From Octopus sinensis (taxonomy: Eukaryota), in NCBI RefSeq assembly GCF_006345805.1, contig NC_043008.1, positions 2,294,001 through 2,358,000 on the forward strand: a stretch of 64,000 nucleotides of DNA, given 5' to 3'. Made by a program: the position numbers and the translations under genes. A model generated the notes under the pieces. That model was not told the DNA's origin. It saw only the letters and a program-made list of their open reading frames with translations, and did no database searches. Of the stretch, positions 10,894 through 64,000 are shown piece by piece. Positions within the stretch are counted from its first letter, which is position 1. Each line of letters opens with the position of its first letter.

Positions 10894-11156
<263 letters not shown>

Positions 11157-11160
<4 letters not shown>

Positions 11161-11470
11161 CACATGACCACGTGACCGACCTGGCTATCAGATGTTGCTA
11201 CACATCGCTGGTCACAAAGCGCTTCGCATTGTTTTACCCTTCAAATGATGCCACCCCGCTGGCTAAGCGAACAGGGCAACAGAAGAGTGAGAGAAAGTTG
11301 TGGCGAAAGAGTACAGCAGGGATCGACGCCTCCCCCTTCCGGAGCATCGTGGAACTTTATGTGTTTTCTTTCAAGTGTAGAGGGAATTTTTTTTCAAAGC
11401 ATTTCCCAAGACAGAGATTACTCGGATGGTTCAGTCAATCCACCCACTCACAATGCCCGGTCTGGGAATC
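11157..11470 (-). mobile_element. tRNA-headed SINE family B, with an internal insertion of about 69 bp
   Basis: Reverse complement aligns with 24958-25248 (gatccctgctgtactctttcgccacaac...tgtgaccagcgatgt...acatctgatagcc). Confidence 0.85.
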
Positions 11471-26216: not shown

Positions 26217-26793
26217 TGTTTCTTTATTAGCCACACAGGGCTGCACACAGACAGAACAAATTACAAGGTAGAGCTTTTCTTTTGAAGGTATAAAAAAAAA
26301 GTGGTGGCTTCGTCATTCATACGTGCCATTCTTGCTACATTCACCCATCTTTTTTTAAAACATTCGCTAGACAAAACTTGCCTCTCTACTCTCACTTTCC
26401 TTTTCAAGTGGTACTTGAAGAAGTTGATGAGAGATTGACCAGAGAGGAAAGTGTTTGTCTCCAATCCTTTCAGACGCGTCCACCAGATACATTCTTTCGC
26501 CATAGCCACAAGGATGATGAAAATATCTCTTCCTTCCCGTTTGAAGGAAGGAGGCGTGACAATATTGACGATAGACTCAGCTGATAAACCGACTCGTCCC
26601 ACACGTGACAGCAGTTGTTCGACATAAGCCCACAGGTCGGAAATTGTTGGACACTGAACGAGTGCGTGCAGAACGGTTTCGTCGCTCTGACCGCATCTCG
26701 GGCAGGTCGGCCCCGTGTTTCTCGAGCCGTGTCTGTAGAGCTTATCCCGAACGGGTAGCGCTTCTCGGTAGCACTGCCAGGCCAGGGATCTCT
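26217..26793 (-). mobile_element. 5'-truncated Tx1/L1-clade LINE (zf-RVT/CCHC C-terminus + 3' UTR) inserted in (GATA)n
   Basis: Uninterrupted frame SLAWQCYREALPVRDKL...TCPRCGQSDETVLHALVQC...LWAYVE...IWWTR...KKRW. AATAAA at 26228-26223 is followed directly by (TATC)n. Confidence 0.9.
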
Positions 26794-26812
26794 GATAGAT
26801 AGATAGATAGAT

Positions 26813-26859
<47 letters not shown>
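26794..26859. repeat. (GATA)n microsatellite
   Basis: Directly visible; same orientation as 25970-26216. Confidence 0.97.
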
Positions 26860-26861
<2 letters not shown>

Positions 26862-28506
26862 AAAAACATCTATTTATCTGTCTACTTAACAATCTCTTCA
26901 AAAGTCTATTTGCAAGTCAACCACAAAATTGTTAATCAATTAATTCGTTTCGCATTTCGAGCTTTTCTTGCTTTATTCTTTCTACTCTCTCCCTCAGGCT
27001 ATCCATACATCCACTTCTCTCTCTTCGCTTCGTTTTTCTTTCTCTCTCTCCTTTATTCACTTACCCAGTCTTTCTCTCCACTTTTCGTTATTTTCGTCTG
27101 ATTTCTTTTTCTTCATCTGTCCCTCTTTTCTTTGTCCTGTATTTCAGCTTTTACTTTACTTAGCAAATGAAAATCACTGCGTTGAAGTCTACACACTTCT
27201 CATTCCTACTGTCCGGTCTCTCTCCTAACCCCACACTTGAGCAAATGCAAACTGCCCCTTGAAGCTATAAGTTTCTCTCGCATACTATCACACTAATACA
27301 GTTCTCTAAAGTTACAATTCCAGATGACAAAAGCATTTGTGACGATGCTCCATCATATAAAAAGTTCATGATTTCGACCGAAATACCACGACTAGTTAAA
27401 GATTATTTTGTCGCATATGACCTTTACTTGTAACTTACTTTCTTGACATAGTAAATGTGGACGATTGAGAATATATCGAACAGAATTCTATCAATAACTC
27501 TAGCTGATAAATCATGTACAGATGAACAATAAGACCATTCCAGTCGCAGAATCCTTATTCCTGGACGTAGATGTGTCAATATTTCTATTCACATTAAGAA
27601 TATCTACTCGCATGGGTGTCTGCATTTGAGAGAAGGATTGCGGTCATTTAATGATACCAGGACAGTATAAACAGTAATATATCGTTTCATTTTTCTGTGA
27701 AAATAGTACAATTAAAAAATTTCATTATAAACAGAGCACTGTTAAATTAGCGGTGCAAATAATACGTTACGAATACTAACGCATAAATAGTTCCTTTACA
27801 GAATCTCTGTATAATTAGTGCAATGTAAACAGTTTGAATGGTTGCTATTCATTATAAACAGCACAGATAGGTCCTCATTATGCAACACATTTTTAAATAA
27901 ATATTCAGTGTTGTTATGTGGACACTTTATTCATTTTAAATACAAAAAATGCTAGATATTTAGAGTAATCGTAACATGCGTAGTTGGTCACTGTAACTTG
28001 TGTAGATTGAATAAGGCAGAAACGTAGCAGCATTCAAAACATGAGAAAGTAGACAATAGAATGAGAGTTTATCAGTATAATCTGTGTATTAAACATCCAT
28101 CACCGTATATTATAAAATGTGCAGTGATGGGGGGTCAAGGAAGCAGTAGAGAGATGGCTAGTGTCTATATTAAGACGTCAGATTCTAGATATACGCAGAT
28201 TTATATTTCAATGGTAAATATATATGGCGCCTATGTTTATGGTGAACATTTCTTACTTGATATAACCAATGTTAACAGGGATTGATGCCATCGATAAAAT
28301 AAATTCTACCCCCGAATTCCATCCGTGTTCAAAGGTTCAAAGGAATGATATCGGGGGTATTTGCCTTTTTTAAAGATTGCCGTCTGTGGTTTCCAAGAGA
28401 ATGCAAAGATGAAGGAGATTCCTCATTCATTCTTGATGACGAAGGTGTTACCGACTCTCCTCTCTGATTTGAAAGAATGTATACTATTACTATGTTTATA
28501 TATATA

Positions 28507-28843: not shown

Positions 28844-29885
28844 CGTGCGTGCGCACACGCATGTATTCATATTCATATATATATATAACAAGTTAGAAAG
28901 AATTTCTCTGCAACCTGGGGCACAAAAATCTATGTAGTTCGAGGAAGTCGCTTTGGGTCTGTTAATGTGAGGTTTCTTGTTGAAGAAGAAGCTAAGAAAA
29001 GAAGCAACTCCAAAAAGCGATGAGCTTTATGAGCACGTGAAAGCAGTTTGGAAAGACTAGCAGGAATGGATTGTCCTGAAGGACAGAAGAAAAATAATAA
29101 AAGAAAAATATGAGGCGTGACGTTAGATTAAAACGAAAAGACGAGAGGGAGAATTTATATGAACCGACACAGAAACAATCTCACCGTCAGACACCAAATA
29201 ACAAAACCACACAAACACTAAAATACACCATCCACTTTAGAAATACCGAAACAAACAACACATATCAATCCACACCAAAAGCTTGAAAAAGTCTCAGACC
29301 ACAAATGAATATTTTCAATTTCCTTCCATCTATTTAGATTAGGTATTACGAAAGCCTGGTGTTGCCATAGAAGCAGTATCTAGTACTTAGTATGTTCAGA
29401 TCATTAGATACAAACGCGAGAACAATCAGAAGAAGCAGTAATTGTAATCAAGCCGAATACACATTTACAGTAAGTACTAAATTTACTCATCATCATGTCG
29501 ATAGGGAATGTAAGGAAAACCACGGCATAATAAACTGTAGAAAAGTATTAATATTAATGTACTATGCATGACATTACATCTAATGTAATTGCCTTAAAAT
29601 CACAAGCAAAAAAAAACAATATGCAATGACATGATCATCACATGACCGTGCCTGACACAAAGATAATTAAATAGGTAGGATTTGTTAAAACGATATGACG
29701 ATAGTTCATCCGCTAGAATGTACCTCGTTTGTAAATTGAAACCATTGAAAAGATTAAATATTAGGTCGCGCAAATAATTATTAAAAAGAAAACTATACTT
29801 AATGACCATTCCGAAATATAACAATATAATTAATGCATAATAAACTATTCGGTGTAATTCTCTTCAGAAATCTTACAACTTAAAT

Positions 29886-29955
<70 letters not shown>

Positions 29956-29980
29956 GTGTGTGTGTATGTATGTATATATT

Positions 29981-33699: not shown

Positions 33700-34118
33700 T
33701 AAGTGTATAACTGGCTTTAGCGTGGAATAGTATCGTGTAGAGAATGTTGTGTTGTAGCCTGTTCGATAACCAACGAAAGCGCGTGTCGGGAACCTTCGAT
33801 ATGGTCACGTTACTTACAGTGTTTAATATTTGTTGAAGTAAAGAATCCCTTCGGTCATGAATGACCCTGGGATTGCTCCAAGAAAAAGTACTTTCCGAGG
33901 CACAAATCCGGGTTAGGTTATTTATGGAAGACCAACAGTTGCCCACGCATGAGGATGTTATTCGAGGGAAAGGCAAACATCGAAACAGCTTGGCTCCAGT
34001 GATGACGCAAGTGGAAGAGCGTGAAATGTCTTGCTCAATAGCACAACGCACAGCCAGGTCCTGGAACCGAACTTAACACTTCATGATTGTGAGCCCGACG
34101 CTCTAACAACTGAGACAT
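33700..34118 (-). mobile_element. tRNA-headed SINE family D
   Basis: Reverse complement starts tgtctcagttgttagagcgtcgggctcacaatcatgaagtgttaagttcggttccaggacctggctg...ttgagcaagaca; related to 48070-48435. Confidence 0.75.
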
Positions 34119-34721
34119 TATACAATAACAAGTAATTTGTGCTTTACACTACAGTTTATACAACCATATATTCTTGTAGAATTACACACAGAGACATTGA
34201 AATATATATCTGTTGAAGGAAAACAGGAAAATGTGATAAAGGATGAAGAATTTGTGGAATTAACAACAAAGATGTCACCCACGTCATACGCTATTTTCCA
34301 AAACTATCGTCGCAGTATTGTCTACCGATGAGATATGATGTTGACCTAAGACACTATAATGAAACCTGTGGAAAGGATAAGCCTGAAGCAAAAGAAACAA
34401 GAACCTGCAGTGAGTTAGCCTCATAAAATACGAAGGAATACTGTCGTAATGTCTCTATAAAAAAACTCAATAAAATGTAAACACAGTAGACCTGACATAA
34501 TGATTTAAGTTAGAGAAGAGACTTAGTGTACAGTTGTGAATATTCGCTAACCAGCGGCTGCAAATATAGAGCTAGAGATCAGTAAAAAAGAAAATACGTA
34601 CGCTTAACTAGTCAGAAATCTAAAGCTACTCTACTGAGATAGAAAGAAATTGACGTAGCTGGTATTTGAAATCTGTATCAAAACAAATAATATACGTGTC
34701 TCAAGTTCTTAGAAAAGAATA

Positions 34722-35706
34722 CACCTTTGCTGGAAGATGGTATTGGTGATGAGGAGCTGATGCTCGGTGCAGAACTCAAGCAAGAAGCGCCCGTTGTCGT
34801 TGCAGTTTTTCCGATGACTCCTTGCCACATTCTCGACCCACGGCCCACACTGGCATTGAATTCTCCTACGATTATGACATTATCATCGACAGATTTTCCC
34901 TCGAGTAGTCTGCACAGTCTGAGTAGAACTTGTACTTGTCTGCTAGGACTCTTTCGAGGATCGGGTAGTAAATGCTGAAGCTAGTGGCATGCTGCTTGTC
35001 TTTAAAAAGAGGGCGCATGAAGCTGAACCGGTCGCCATGAACTGCTGGTAGGGTTTCCAGTCTGGAGGCGATGACGTTTTTTACCATGAAACCGACACCT
35101 GAAAGGTGTCTTTCTGATGGGTTTTTTGCCTGACTAATATAGGGTGTATCAGATACAATATTCTTTCAGAGTGCTCTACTTAGGGAGCCGGACTTCATTA
35201 AGGGCTGCGATTTCAATATCTAGCCTGGATAGTTCGTGACCATCGAGAGCGCATCATCGTCCGGGAAGAGCTCTGTTTCTCGAGTCAAGAATGGTTTGTG
35301 GAGTTGTGGTCGGGGTTGTGGATGTGGACAGGTTCCTCGGTCAACGTGTTGGTGTTTTAAGATGAAGTACTGTCTCCACAGAACAGGCCTCGCCCTTTAC
35401 ACTCGGGCTTTATCTTATCTGACTTAGCAAGCTAGAACGATGATAGAGAGGTTTTCGTGTAGCAGGTTTTATAAAGGTGTCTCCTTGAGAGGTTGCCCAC
35501 CTCGGCTAATGAGACCCATTTGCCCGGAGAGACCTGGTTATACTGCGCCAAACACACGGATTTGTCCTCACCTGTTGGATTATATCCGGGTTGTACCACG
35601 AGGAGGTCAGATTAGGACTTGGGGTTTGCATCATTCTGTGGAAGATTTAGCCCAATATGGTGCTCGCCCAAACCAGCAAACGCTATGAGGACCCCCTATA
35701 CCACCC
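34722..35706 (-). mobile_element. RTE-clade (BovB-like) LINE: intact 5' UTR + decayed APE endonuclease, 3'-truncated
   Basis: ELSRLDIEIAALNEVRL, SGKKPSERHLSGVGFMVKN, DKFYSD, IIVGEFNASVG, WQGVIGK and EFCTEHQLLITNTIFQQ are RTE APE motifs; stops and frameshifts present. Confidence 0.9.
35564..35706 (-). ncRNA. HDV-like self-cleaving ribozyme at the RTE 5' terminus
   Basis: P1 gggtggt/acaaccc (6 of 7 pairs); P2 gtcctaatctg/caggtgaggac (10 of 11); P3 acc/ggt; L3 UCCUCGU; GG for P1.1; short P4; J4/2 uCcAA with candidate catalytic C at 35578. Confidence 0.8.
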
Positions 35707-35708
35707 TC

Positions 35709-35726
35709 TACTACCACTACTACTAT

Positions 35727-35808
<82 letters not shown>
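35709..35808. repeat. (TAC)n/(GTA)n microsatellite
   Basis: Directly visible; abuts the RTE 5' end. Confidence 0.97.
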
Positions 35809-37889: not shown

Positions 37890-38502
37890 GATGGGGCGTA
37901 AACATGCAGCGGTAACAAACCAGCAAGCATAGACACGAATAGTCACACAAACACACGCGCACGCAACTCACACAAAAACTTTATATAGAAATATGCATGC
38001 AACTTTATTTGTATGTCTCTTTATGTTTATAGAGTCGAAGATATATAAAACTTTCGCTATATGCATAAATATTTGCATACAATCATACGTACCTAATGCT
38101 TGAATGTAAATTATAAATGCTGTACAGAAAAATAAAAGCAAATTCTTAATAACTCATTCGGAATATATTTCTAAGTGAATTATATTTACTTTATTATTTC
38201 GTAATTTTATATATACATCGGTAAACGCACGTGAACACCTGCGTAATTATCCAACACTACTCACCCACACAACTTACAATCCTGTGACATGTAGCTATAA
38301 GAAAAATATACTCACATACACATGTGCGCAATATATATATATATAATATATATATATATATGTATATAGTATATATATGTATATATGTATATGTACATAT
38401 ATATATATATATGTATACACACACACACAACACACACATATATATATTACATATATACATATATATACATATATATATGTACATATATATATATATACAC
38501 AT

Positions 38503-58851: not shown

Positions 58852-59472
<621 letters not shown>

Positions 59473-63819: not shown

Positions 63820-64000
<181 letters not shown>

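What the first reader, a model, noticed from the sequence alone, without database searches (positions are those of the whole stretch)
35564..35706. HDV-like ribozyme whose predicted cut site is the apparent 5' end of an RTE LINE
Seen: on the minus strand, right after (GTA)n, the sequence folds into the full HDV nested double pseudoknot. P1 is 35706-35700 with 35594-35588 (one G-A mismatch). J1/2 is about 80 nt. P2 is 35618-35608 with 35574-35564. P3 is acc/ggt, L3 is UCCUCGU, GG lies at 35587-35586, P4 is only about 7 nt, and J4/2 is UCCAA with C35578 in the catalytic position. G1 (35706) is where the unique sequence begins. Known: HDV-like ribozymes process the 5' ends of RTE, R2 and R4 retrotransposons. 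Inference: this is a cephalopod RTE family with a self-cleaving 5' end and an unusually minimal P4; I know of no description of it, but cannot check.
Basis: partly seen in the sequence, partly recalled or inferred. Interest (0 to 1): 0.78.

Follow-up and report, generated by a model that had tools for sequence, protein, structure and literature searches.

The report
HDV-like ribozyme heading an RTE fragment
A small self-cutting RNA motif of the well-known HDV-like type sits at the front of a dead, truncated RTE jumping-gene copy; this arrangement is already known from other animals, so it is a new example rather than a new kind of thing.

Summary

The catalytic core is not a chance match. It is the only non-microsatellite Rfam hit in the window: drz-agam-1, 32.5 bits, E=0.013, below the 37-bit gathering score. 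It is also the only hit of my own HDV descriptor on either strand. About 0.01 such hits are expected per window.

The core lies 39 nt upstream of a 5'-UTR module shared with RTE relatives. It is about 270 nt upstream of, and in the same orientation as, a decayed RTE-type endonuclease.

P1, and therefore the cut site at A35707/G35706, is weaker evidence. It pairs 6 of 7 with an internal G-A mismatch. It is, however, the only such complement within 480 nt, and it sits exactly at the (GTA)n boundary.

I could retrieve no other copy of the family, so covariation and shared 5' ends remain untested. Seventy-two loci of related RTEs show no HDV-like motif.

A missing P4 and a long J1/2 are both already documented: silkmoth R2, abalone, phage theta ribozymes. 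Cephalopod origin could not be checked.

Verdict: a new member of a known kind, in a dead copy that is truncated at its 3' end.

The parts
35708..35808 (-). (GTA)n microsatellite immediately 5' of the predicted cut site. It is either the target microsatellite or the tail of an earlier insertion.
   Evidence: Tandem Repeats Finder: period 3, 33.7 copies, 95% matches. RTE 3' UTRs are typically simple-sequence repeats (PMC2887409, PMC9115989).
35700..35706 (-). P1 5' strand, GGGUGGU. The predicted scissile bond is between A35707 and G35706.
   Evidence: 6 of 7 pairs with 35594-35588. It is the only complement of 6/7 or better within 480 nt upstream of P2. Duplex energy -5.3 kcal/mol.
35619..35699 (-). 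J1/2 insertion of 81 nt. It has a predicted closing stem, GGGG 35696-35693 with CCCC 35624-35621, which resembles a P1.2 helix.
   Evidence: Minimum-free-energy fold of -23.0 kcal/mol with z = -0.47, so not significant on its own. The role of a J1/2 helix in bringing P1 and P2 together is described in PMC4908430.
35608..35618 (-). P2 5' strand, GUCCUAAUCUG.
   Evidence: 10 of 11 positions pair with 35574-35564, -11.1 kcal/mol. Aligned as P2 by the drz-agam-1 covariance model.
35595..35607 (-). P3 (ACC/GGU) with L3 UCCUCGU.
   Evidence: Identical to the drz-agam-1 consensus. The same 13-mer occurs in clean minimal HDV-like ribozymes of phage contigs.
35588..35594 (-). P1 3' strand, ACAACCC.
35586..35587 (-). 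P1.1 GG, able to pair with C35603 and C35602 of L3.
   Evidence: Read directly from the sequence. Aligned to the consensus GG.
35579..35585 (-). 7-nt linker AUAUAAU where P4 normally sits.
   Evidence: Phage ribozymes have AUAACG at the same place.
35575..35578 (-). J4/2, CCAA. C35578 is in the catalytic position.
   Evidence: Aligned to the consensus 'CuaA' of drz-agam-1.
35564..35574 (-). P2 3' strand, CAGGUGAGGAC.
35313..35525 (-). 5'-UTR module shared with related RTE elements. It is probably a structured RNA.
   Evidence: blastn gives 66-75% identity to L002-L005, L033, L045 and L046. Alignments A2 and A3. Seven base pairs show compensatory changes.
34716..35298 (-). Decayed RTE-type apurinic/apyrimidinic (APE) endonuclease, residues about 1-197 only. 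It has several frameshifts and stops. The element ends here.
   Evidence: Six-frame translation. phmmer E=9e-57 to P0001. tblastn and tblastx matches stop at about 34716-34724, and there is no reverse transcriptase match anywhere in the window.

Best explanation
This is a relic of an HDV-like self-cleaving ribozyme that formed the 5' terminus of an RTE-clade non-LTR retrotransposon.

In the active ancestor, the element had no promoter of its own and was transcribed as part of a longer host or read-through RNA. The double-pseudoknot fold (P1, P2, P3, P1.1) then cut the RNA just 5' of G1, using the J4/2 cytosine (here C35578) and a Mg2+ ion held by L3. This left an RNA beginning exactly at G1, which was reverse-transcribed into a new site.

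That would explain why unique sequence starts at G35706, right after a (GTA)n tract. The tract is probably the microsatellite target or tail that RTEs use for priming.

The ribozyme is of the minimal type, with a 7-nt linker in place of P4. It carries an 81-nt J1/2 domain whose closing stem would bring P1 and P2 together.

What is shown: the core sequence and its pairings, its orientation, and its position relative to RTE-homologous sequence. What is inferred: self-cleavage, the exact cut site, and the role of the microsatellite.

This particular copy is dead. It has a P1 mismatch, a broken endonuclease and no reverse transcriptase.
For: - The core matches drz-agam-1 at 32.5 bits, with E=8e-5 locally and E=0.013 window-wide. 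It is the only non-repeat hit.
- It is the single hit of my own descriptor in 128 kb, against 0.007-0.02 expected.
- In 66.8 kb of control transposon loci, Rfam finds nothing at E<=0.5.
- The same P3/L3, a roughly 6-nt linker and a C-YAA J4/2 occur in clean phage ribozymes that have perfect P1 helices.
- The rest of the ribozyme is nearly intact, so its P1 partner should be too. The only complement of 6/7 or better within 480 nt is at 35706, on the microsatellite boundary.
- Immediately upstream of P2 there is no complementarity. The model's default placement, UGCAAAC, does not pair.
- RTE-homologous 5' UTR starts 39 nt after the ribozyme, and the endonuclease follows on the same strand.
- The distance from G1 to the conserved block is 242 nt. 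In a related family with a defined 5' end it is about 290 nt.
- The literature reports RTE ribozymes that cleave at the 5' junction (PMC3774820), functional J1/2 domains (PMC4908430), and RTE tails made of simple-sequence repeats (PMC2887409).
Against: - There is only one copy, so there is no covariation and no test of shared 5' ends.
- P1 has an internal G-A mismatch, and its chance probability is only about 0.1 within the unique stretch.
- The score is below Rfam's gathering threshold.
- No related RTE locus (72 examined) has an HDV-like motif. Some relatives appear to begin at the conserved module itself, so the ribozyme-bearing 180 nt is specific to this lineage or possibly foreign.
- A competing helix, 35698-35689 with 35608-35601 at -13.6 kcal/mol, would mask P3/L3.
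- The pseudoknot-free fold is no more stable than shuffled sequence, z = +0.22.
- A fragment truncated at its 3' end is not the usual product of LINE insertion.
Confidence: 0.62

Rival explanations
1. The HDV-like core is real, but the P1 proposed at 35706 is coincidental. The true P1 strand was lost or lies elsewhere, so G35706 is neither the cut site nor the element's 5' end.
For: - P1 is only 6/7, with a central G-A mismatch.
- In random sequence, a P1 of 6/7 or better within 250 nt accompanies most chance cores.
- GGGUGGUA resembles the neighbouring GUGGUAGUA repeat variant.
- Known minimal ribozymes have J1/2 of 2-3 nt.
Against: - For this P1' (A and C only, so no wobble pairing) the expectation is about 0.1 in the unique stretch.
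- It is the only candidate within 480 nt.
- It coincides with the repeat boundary.
- It is followed by a predicted closing stem of J1/2.
- Long J1/2 domains are well documented in retrotransposon ribozymes (PMC3774820, PMC4908430).
Confidence: 0.17
2. The ribozyme is real but belongs to something other than the RTE: another retroelement, a SINE-like unit, or a host transcript. On this reading the RTE copy starts at about 35530.
For: - Homology to relatives begins only at about 35525.
- In L002 and L004, similarity between relatives begins at that module.
- No relative carries an HDV-like motif.
Against: - The gap is only 39 nt and the strand is the same.
- HDV-like cores are rare: one in this window, and none in 222 kb of relatives' loci.
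- The ribozyme sits where RTE ribozymes are known to sit.
- The 5' UTRs of the relatives are themselves modular and of variable length, reaching -600 to -900 nt from the endonuclease start.
Confidence: 0.15
3. The whole motif is a chance resemblance with no ribozyme ancestry.
For: The score is below the Rfam gathering threshold. The fold energy is not better than shuffled sequence.
Against: - The window-wide E-value is 0.013 across all families.
- The 15-base anchor alone is expected about 1e-4 times in 128 kb. On top of that come a 10/11 P2 placed exactly against P3 and the C-CAA of J4/2.
- Position and orientation fit the known biology.
Confidence: 0.03

Closest known systems
drz-Agam-1 (Rfam RF01787), HDV-like ribozyme of Anopheles gambiae
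   Same: P3 ACC/GGU, L3 UCCUCGU, the GG of P1.1, the catalytic C followed by xAA, a P2 of 9-11 bp, and a G1-C closing pair of P1.
   Different: The model expects a P4 of about 25 nt and a J1/2 of about 5 nt. Here P4 is a 7-nt linker and J1/2 is 81 nt. The score of 32.5 bits is below the gathering score of 37.
R2 ribozymes of silkmoths (Bombyx mori and other Bombycoidea) and the abalone Haliotis discus ribozyme (PMC3774820)
   Same: They combine a very long J1/2 with no P4 stem, in a ribozyme at the 5' end of a non-LTR retrotransposon. The abalone example has 5 nt in place of P4 and comes from a mollusc.
   Different: R2 is a different LINE clade, specific for rDNA, and its J1/2 is 216-498 nt. 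Those ribozymes were shown to cleave. Here there is no activity data and the host element is RTE-type.
RTE- and baggins-associated HDV-like ribozymes (work cited in PMC3774820 and PMC6765202)
   Same: A self-cleaving HDV-like fold at the 5' junction of promoter-less RTE elements, releasing the element RNA from a co-transcript.
   Different: I could not read the original sequences, so the detailed architecture could not be compared. The RTE relatives I retrieved (40-61% identity in the endonuclease) carry no such motif.
Minimal HDV-like / theta ribozymes of phages (PMC10879173; examples L097, L103 and L115)
   Same: An identical P3/L3 13-mer, a GG-A...linker-C-YAA arrangement with a 6-7 nt linker, and a P2 of 6-8 bp.
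   Different: The phage ribozymes have a J1/2 of 2-3 nt and a perfect 7-bp P1, are about 55 nt long, and lie next to tRNAs in phage genomes. This one has an 81-nt J1/2 and lies in an animal-type retrotransposon.

Membership tests
HDV-like self-cleaving ribozymes | P3 (3 bp) capped by a 7-nt L3 of consensus UCCUCGN | tested here: met
   ACC-UCCUCGU-GGU, identical to the drz-agam-1 consensus.
HDV-like self-cleaving ribozymes | P2 pseudoknot: the segment directly 5' of P3 pairs with the segment directly 3' of J4/2 | tested here: met
   10 of 11 positions pair, -11.1 kcal/mol. Null expectation is 0.007-0.02 per window.
HDV-like self-cleaving ribozymes | P1 of about 7 bp, whose 5' strand starts at the cleavage site (G1) and whose 3' strand directly follows P3' | tested here: inconclusive
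   6 of 7 pairs with an internal G-A mismatch. It is the only candidate within 480 nt, but there is a single sequence and a chance expectation of about 0.1.
HDV-like self-cleaving ribozymes | P1.1: two G-C pairs between the GG after P1' and the CC of L3 | tested here: met
   G35587/G35586 with C35602/C35603. This is pairing potential only.
HDV-like self-cleaving ribozymes | Catalytic cytosine in J4/2, followed by purines (C-N-A-A) before P2' | tested here: met
   C35578-C-A-A, aligned to the consensus CuaA.
HDV-like self-cleaving ribozymes | P4 helix | tested here: not met
   There is only a 7-nt linker, AUAUAAU. P4 is dispensable, and natural members lack it (PMC3774820), so this does not exclude membership.
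HDV-like self-cleaving ribozymes | Score at or above the curated Rfam gathering threshold of an HDV-like family | tested here: not met
   32.5 bits against 37 for RF01787. The shortfall is explained by the missing P4 and by P1, which the model cannot score.
HDV-like self-cleaving ribozymes | Compensatory base changes in P1 and P2 among homologues | not testable with these tools
   No second copy was found in the window, in the protein-indexed assemblies or in the DNA collections.
HDV-like self-cleaving ribozymes | Mg2+-dependent site-specific self-scission | not testable with these tools
   This needs a bench assay.
RTE-clade non-LTR retrotransposon | N-terminal APE-type endonuclease related to RTE/BovB-type elements | tested here: met
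   The stitched 176 aa gives E=9e-57 to 1e-40 and 49-61% identity to proteins that sources name 'craniofacial development protein 2'. Pfam matches Exo_endo_phos_2 only weakly. The clade label rests on that naming and on my own knowledge that CFDP2 derives from BovB/RTE. No phylogeny was run.
RTE-clade non-LTR retrotransposon | Reverse transcriptase domain in the same ORF | tested here: not met
   There is no reverse transcriptase homology anywhere in the window. The copy stops at about 34716. Relatives do carry the start of a reverse transcriptase downstream.
RTE-clade non-LTR retrotransposon | Very short 3' UTR ending in a simple-sequence repeat | not testable with these tools
   The 3' end of this copy is missing. 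Only the 5'-flanking (GTA)n is present.

The most novel reading that the evidence does not exclude
An RTE lineage, possibly of an octopus-like genome, acquired a minimal HDV-like ribozyme without P4 and with an 81-nt J1/2 domain. It was added as a new 5' module in front of an older, conserved structured 5'-UTR element that its ribozyme-free relatives still use. This would be a case of modular capture of a 5'-processing ribozyme. It could explain how promoter-less RTEs reported as expressed in octopus brain obtain defined 5' ends.
Probability: 0.3. Interest if true: 0.45.

Novelty: new member of a known kind. Interest (0 to 1): 0.3.

Why it matters
If other copies confirm it, this adds another animal lineage to the list of RTE elements that define their own 5' ends by self-cleavage. 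It would also be a natural example that combines a P4-less core with a long J1/2 domain.

If the window is from an octopus, it would bear on how RTE transcripts arise without promoters. The octopus papers on RTE expression that I could read (PMC9115989, PMC13282606) do not mention ribozymes.

The principle itself, and both 'unusual' structural features, are already published. The copy in hand is non-functional.

Tried and rejected
1. A second copy inside the window: blastn of 34000-35710 against the window, and a window self-comparison, found none.

2. Family copies through proteins:
- The stitched endonuclease reached only 61% identity at best.
- The spurious 82-aa ORF on the opposite strand of the ribozyme, used as a stand-in for a DNA search, found nothing.
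- Exact core patterns in genome contigs and viral contigs gave 0 hits.

3. Ribozymes in relatives: 72 loci (L001-L072) were scanned. My descriptor found nothing upstream of any endonuclease. Rfam at E<=0.5-1 on 20 loci found no ribozyme. A loose P1/P3 scan at their inferred 5' ends gave only noise.

4. Thermodynamic support: pseudoknot-free folding gave z = +0.22 for the 143 nt and -0.47 for J1/2. This is uninformative for a double pseudoknot.

5. The general pattern ACCTCCTCGTGGTN7GG in viral contigs gave 115 hits. That is roughly the number I estimate by chance for 15 fixed bases, using my own rough guess of the collection's size. Only about 9 of the hits are real minimal ribozymes. They were useful as positive controls, not as relatives.

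6. Source organism: a window ORF is not on record. A LINE ORF in the window hits only unnamed ENA contigs, at 80% identity or less.

7. Microsatellite origin: the flanks of the three (ACT)n/(GTA)n arrays are unrelated, and no RTE 3' end lies upstream of the array.

8. The held part of the O. vulgaris transcriptome supplement has no match to the core.

9. A short-J1/2 version of P1 (UGCAAAC, as placed by the covariance model) was rejected because it has no complementarity to ACAACCC.

Full report
**What is in the sequence**

On the minus strand a (GTA)n array (window 35808-35708; 33.7 units) is followed, after two bases, by G35706.

| Element | Sequence | Coordinates |
|---|---|---|
| P1 | GGGUGGU | 35706-35700 |
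| J1/2 | 81 nt | 35699-35619 |
| P2 | GUCCUAAUCUG | 35618-35608 |
| P3 | ACC | 35607-35605 |
| L3 | UCCUCGU | 35604-35598 |
| P3' | GGU | 35597-35595 |
| P1' | ACAACCC | 35594-35588 |
| P1.1 | GG | 35587-35586 |
| linker in place of P4 | AUAUAAU | 35585-35579 |
| J4/2 | CCAA | 35578-35575 |
| P2' | CAGGUGAGGAC | 35574-35564 |

P1 pairs 6 of 7, with G35702 opposite A35592. P2 pairs 10 of 11 positions.

**Is it more than chance?**

Rfam's default scan reports nothing. With E-value reporting, the region matches the mosquito HDV-like family drz-agam-1 at 32.5 bits against a gathering score of 37. The E-value is 8e-5 for the 401-nt stretch and 0.013 for the whole window, both strands and all 4227 families. 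In the whole-window scan it is the only hit at E<=0.1 that is not a microsatellite look-alike of mir-297, mir-466 or mir-3149.

The alignment shows P3, L3, the GG, the catalytic C and the following AA identical to the consensus. The score is lost on the missing P4 and on P1, which a covariance model cannot score as a pseudoknot.

A descriptor I wrote finds exactly one locus on the two strands of the window, and it is this one. The descriptor requires:
- a 3-bp P3;
- an L3 within one change of UCCUCG, including its CC;
- P1' followed by GG;
- a spacer of 3-120 nt;
- a C plus 2-3 nt;
- a P2 of at least 6 pairs abutting P3.

Markov-chain null sequences give 0.13-0.44 cores of any quality per window. 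For cores with a P2 of at least 10 pairs they give 0.007-0.02.

As a negative control, 66.8 kb of retrotransposon-bearing loci gave no Rfam hit at E<=0.5. As a positive control, the same 13-nt P3/L3 in IMG/VR contigs includes about nine clean minimal HDV-like ribozymes. These have a perfect 7-bp P1, a J1/2 of 2-3 nt, a 6-nt AUAACG linker and a C-YAA J4/2. Examples are L097, L103 and L115. I conclude that the catalytic core is a real HDV-like core.

**P1 and the cut site**

This is the weak link. In general, a P1 of 6/7 or better within 250 nt accompanies most random cores. Here, P1' contains only A and C, so wobble pairing cannot help. About 0.1 candidates are expected in the 82 unique positions upstream of P2.

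- It is the only complement of 6/7 or better within 480 nt.
- It begins at the boundary of the microsatellite.
- The rest of the ribozyme is almost intact, so its P1 partner should also be nearly intact. The positions directly upstream of P2, where the covariance model put P1, have no complementarity at all.

J1/2 folds with a GGGG/CCCC closing stem. That leaves 3 nt after P1 and 2 nt before P2, the geometry that a P1.2 helix provides in large HDV-like ribozymes (PMC4908430). The fold is not statistically better than shuffles.

A competing helix between 35698-35689 and 35608-35601 (-13.6 kcal/mol) could mask P3/L3.

**What it is attached to**

Downstream on the same strand, 35298-34716 encodes residues of about 1-197 of an APE-type endonuclease, broken by frameshifts and stops. 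A stitched 176-aa version hits proteins that sources call 'craniofacial development protein 2', with E from 9e-57 to 1e-40 and 49-61% identity. To my knowledge, that name marks RTE/BovB-derived endonucleases.

Homology stops at about 34716. There is no reverse transcriptase anywhere in the window. The copy is therefore a dead fragment of about 985 bp, truncated at its 3' end.

Between ribozyme and endonuclease, 35525-35313 is 66-75% identical at the nucleotide level to a module in the 5' UTR of related RTEs from metagenomes and genomes: L002-L005, L033, L045 and L046. That module shows seven base pairs with compensatory changes. Relative to those elements the window lacks about 390 nt between the module and the endonuclease.

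The ribozyme thus ends 39 nt before recognisably RTE sequence, in sense orientation. G1 lies 242 nt before the conserved block. In a related family whose 5' end is defined by several copies (L005, L015, L033, L059), the distance is about 290 nt.

**What the relatives say**

None of 72 related loci has an HDV-like motif. My descriptor found none. Rfam found none on 20 of them. A loose scan at their 5' ends gave only noise. In L002 and L004, similarity between relatives begins at the conserved module.

The ribozyme-bearing 180 nt is therefore specific to the window's lineage. This is compatible with modular 5' UTRs. It also leaves room for the rival reading that the ribozyme belongs to a different unit.

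No closer relative could be reached. The best endonuclease match is 61%, a proxy search with the opposite-strand ORF found nothing, and exact core patterns are absent from the DNA collections.

**Comparison with what is known**

- HDV-like ribozymes at the 5' junction of R2, R4, L1Tc, baggins and RTE elements are established (PMC3774820, PMC6765202).
Silkmoth R2 ribozymes have J1/2 loops of 216-498 nt and no P4. An abalone ribozyme has 5 nt in place of P4 (PMC3774820).
- Minimal theta ribozymes in phages have the same core (PMC10879173).
- RTE 3' UTRs are typically microsatellites that take part in priming (PMC2887409, PMC6007223, PMC9115989). That offers an explanation for the (GTA)n flank, but the 3' end of this copy is missing, so it is only an inference.

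**Origin and literature**

I could not identify the organism.

No paper in the library combines 'HDV-like', 'ribozyme' and 'octopus'. The octopus RTE papers do not mention ribozymes.

**Verdict**

It is overstated on novelty and untested at the family level. I file it as a new member of a known kind, seen in a decayed copy. My probabilities are about 0.9 that the core is a true HDV-like ribozyme relic, about 0.75 that it belongs to the RTE, and about 0.6 that G35706 was the cleavage site and 5' end.

Noticed in passing
window 35313-35525 (-); L045:1890-2070, L004:370-550, L003:2440-2625, L002:1225-1400, L005:1920-2100: A non-coding module of about 140-170 nt in the 5' UTR is conserved at 66-90% identity between the window and RTE relatives from unrelated samples. 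RNAalifold predicts helices with 7 compensatory pairs, including a CCNAGC-UU-GCUNGG hairpin. Rfam finds no match. Its function is unknown; candidates are an RT-binding site, an IRES or a 5'-processing element.
   Followed up: partly
window 35298-35340 (-) compared with L045:2060-2495: The window copy has about 42 nt where relatives have about 435 nt between the conserved module and the endonuclease. That stretch includes the relatives' likely start codon (L045 ORF from 2279). It is probably an internal deletion in this copy.
   Followed up: partly
window 34716-34724 (-): RTE homology ends abruptly after '...NTIFQQ', and G+C content drops. No remainder of the element is found in the 34.7 kb downstream. 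How a 5'-only LINE fragment arose is unexplained.
   Followed up: partly
window 35689-35698 with 35601-35608 (-): A strong alternative helix, UAGGGGGUC with GACCUCCU at -13.6 kcal/mol, forms between the start of J1/2 and P2/P3/L3. It dominates the pseudoknot-free minimum-free-energy fold and would compete with the active fold.
   Followed up: no
L097, L103, L105, L109, L115, L142, L153, L156 (IMG/VR contigs): These are clean minimal HDV-like (theta-type) ribozymes with the same ACC-UCCUCGU-GGU core, a perfect 7-bp P1 and 6-31 nt in place of P4. They turned up among 115 otherwise mostly chance matches to a 15-base pattern.
   Followed up: partly
proteins P0001-P0013 (alignment A1): RTE endonucleases from a sea slug (Plakobranchus), a coral (Acropora), a bird (Myiozetetes) and several metagenomes are 69-83% identical to one another. 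This fits the reported horizontal spread of RTE elements, or contamination.
   Followed up: no
window 26261-26869 (-): A 202-aa ORF encodes the C-terminal zf-RVT part of another LINE, flanked by (GATA)n/(ATAG)n arrays. Its best relatives, at 72-80% identity, are unnamed contigs of ENA assembly ERZ4233750, presumably host DNA of a related species.
   Followed up: partly
window 58855-58903 and 63845-64000: Two more (ACT)n arrays have the same unit as the (GTA)n next to the ribozyme, read on the other strand. Their flanks are unrelated to each other and to the RTE. One abuts a (TAA)n array at 58902-58959.
   Followed up: yes
whole window, e.g. 29884-29975, 38378-38447, 11109-11178: More than 100 sub-threshold Rfam 'miRNA' matches (mir-297, mir-466, mir-3149, mir-1277 and others) all lie on AT/TG microsatellites. 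They are low-complexity artefacts.
   Followed up: yes
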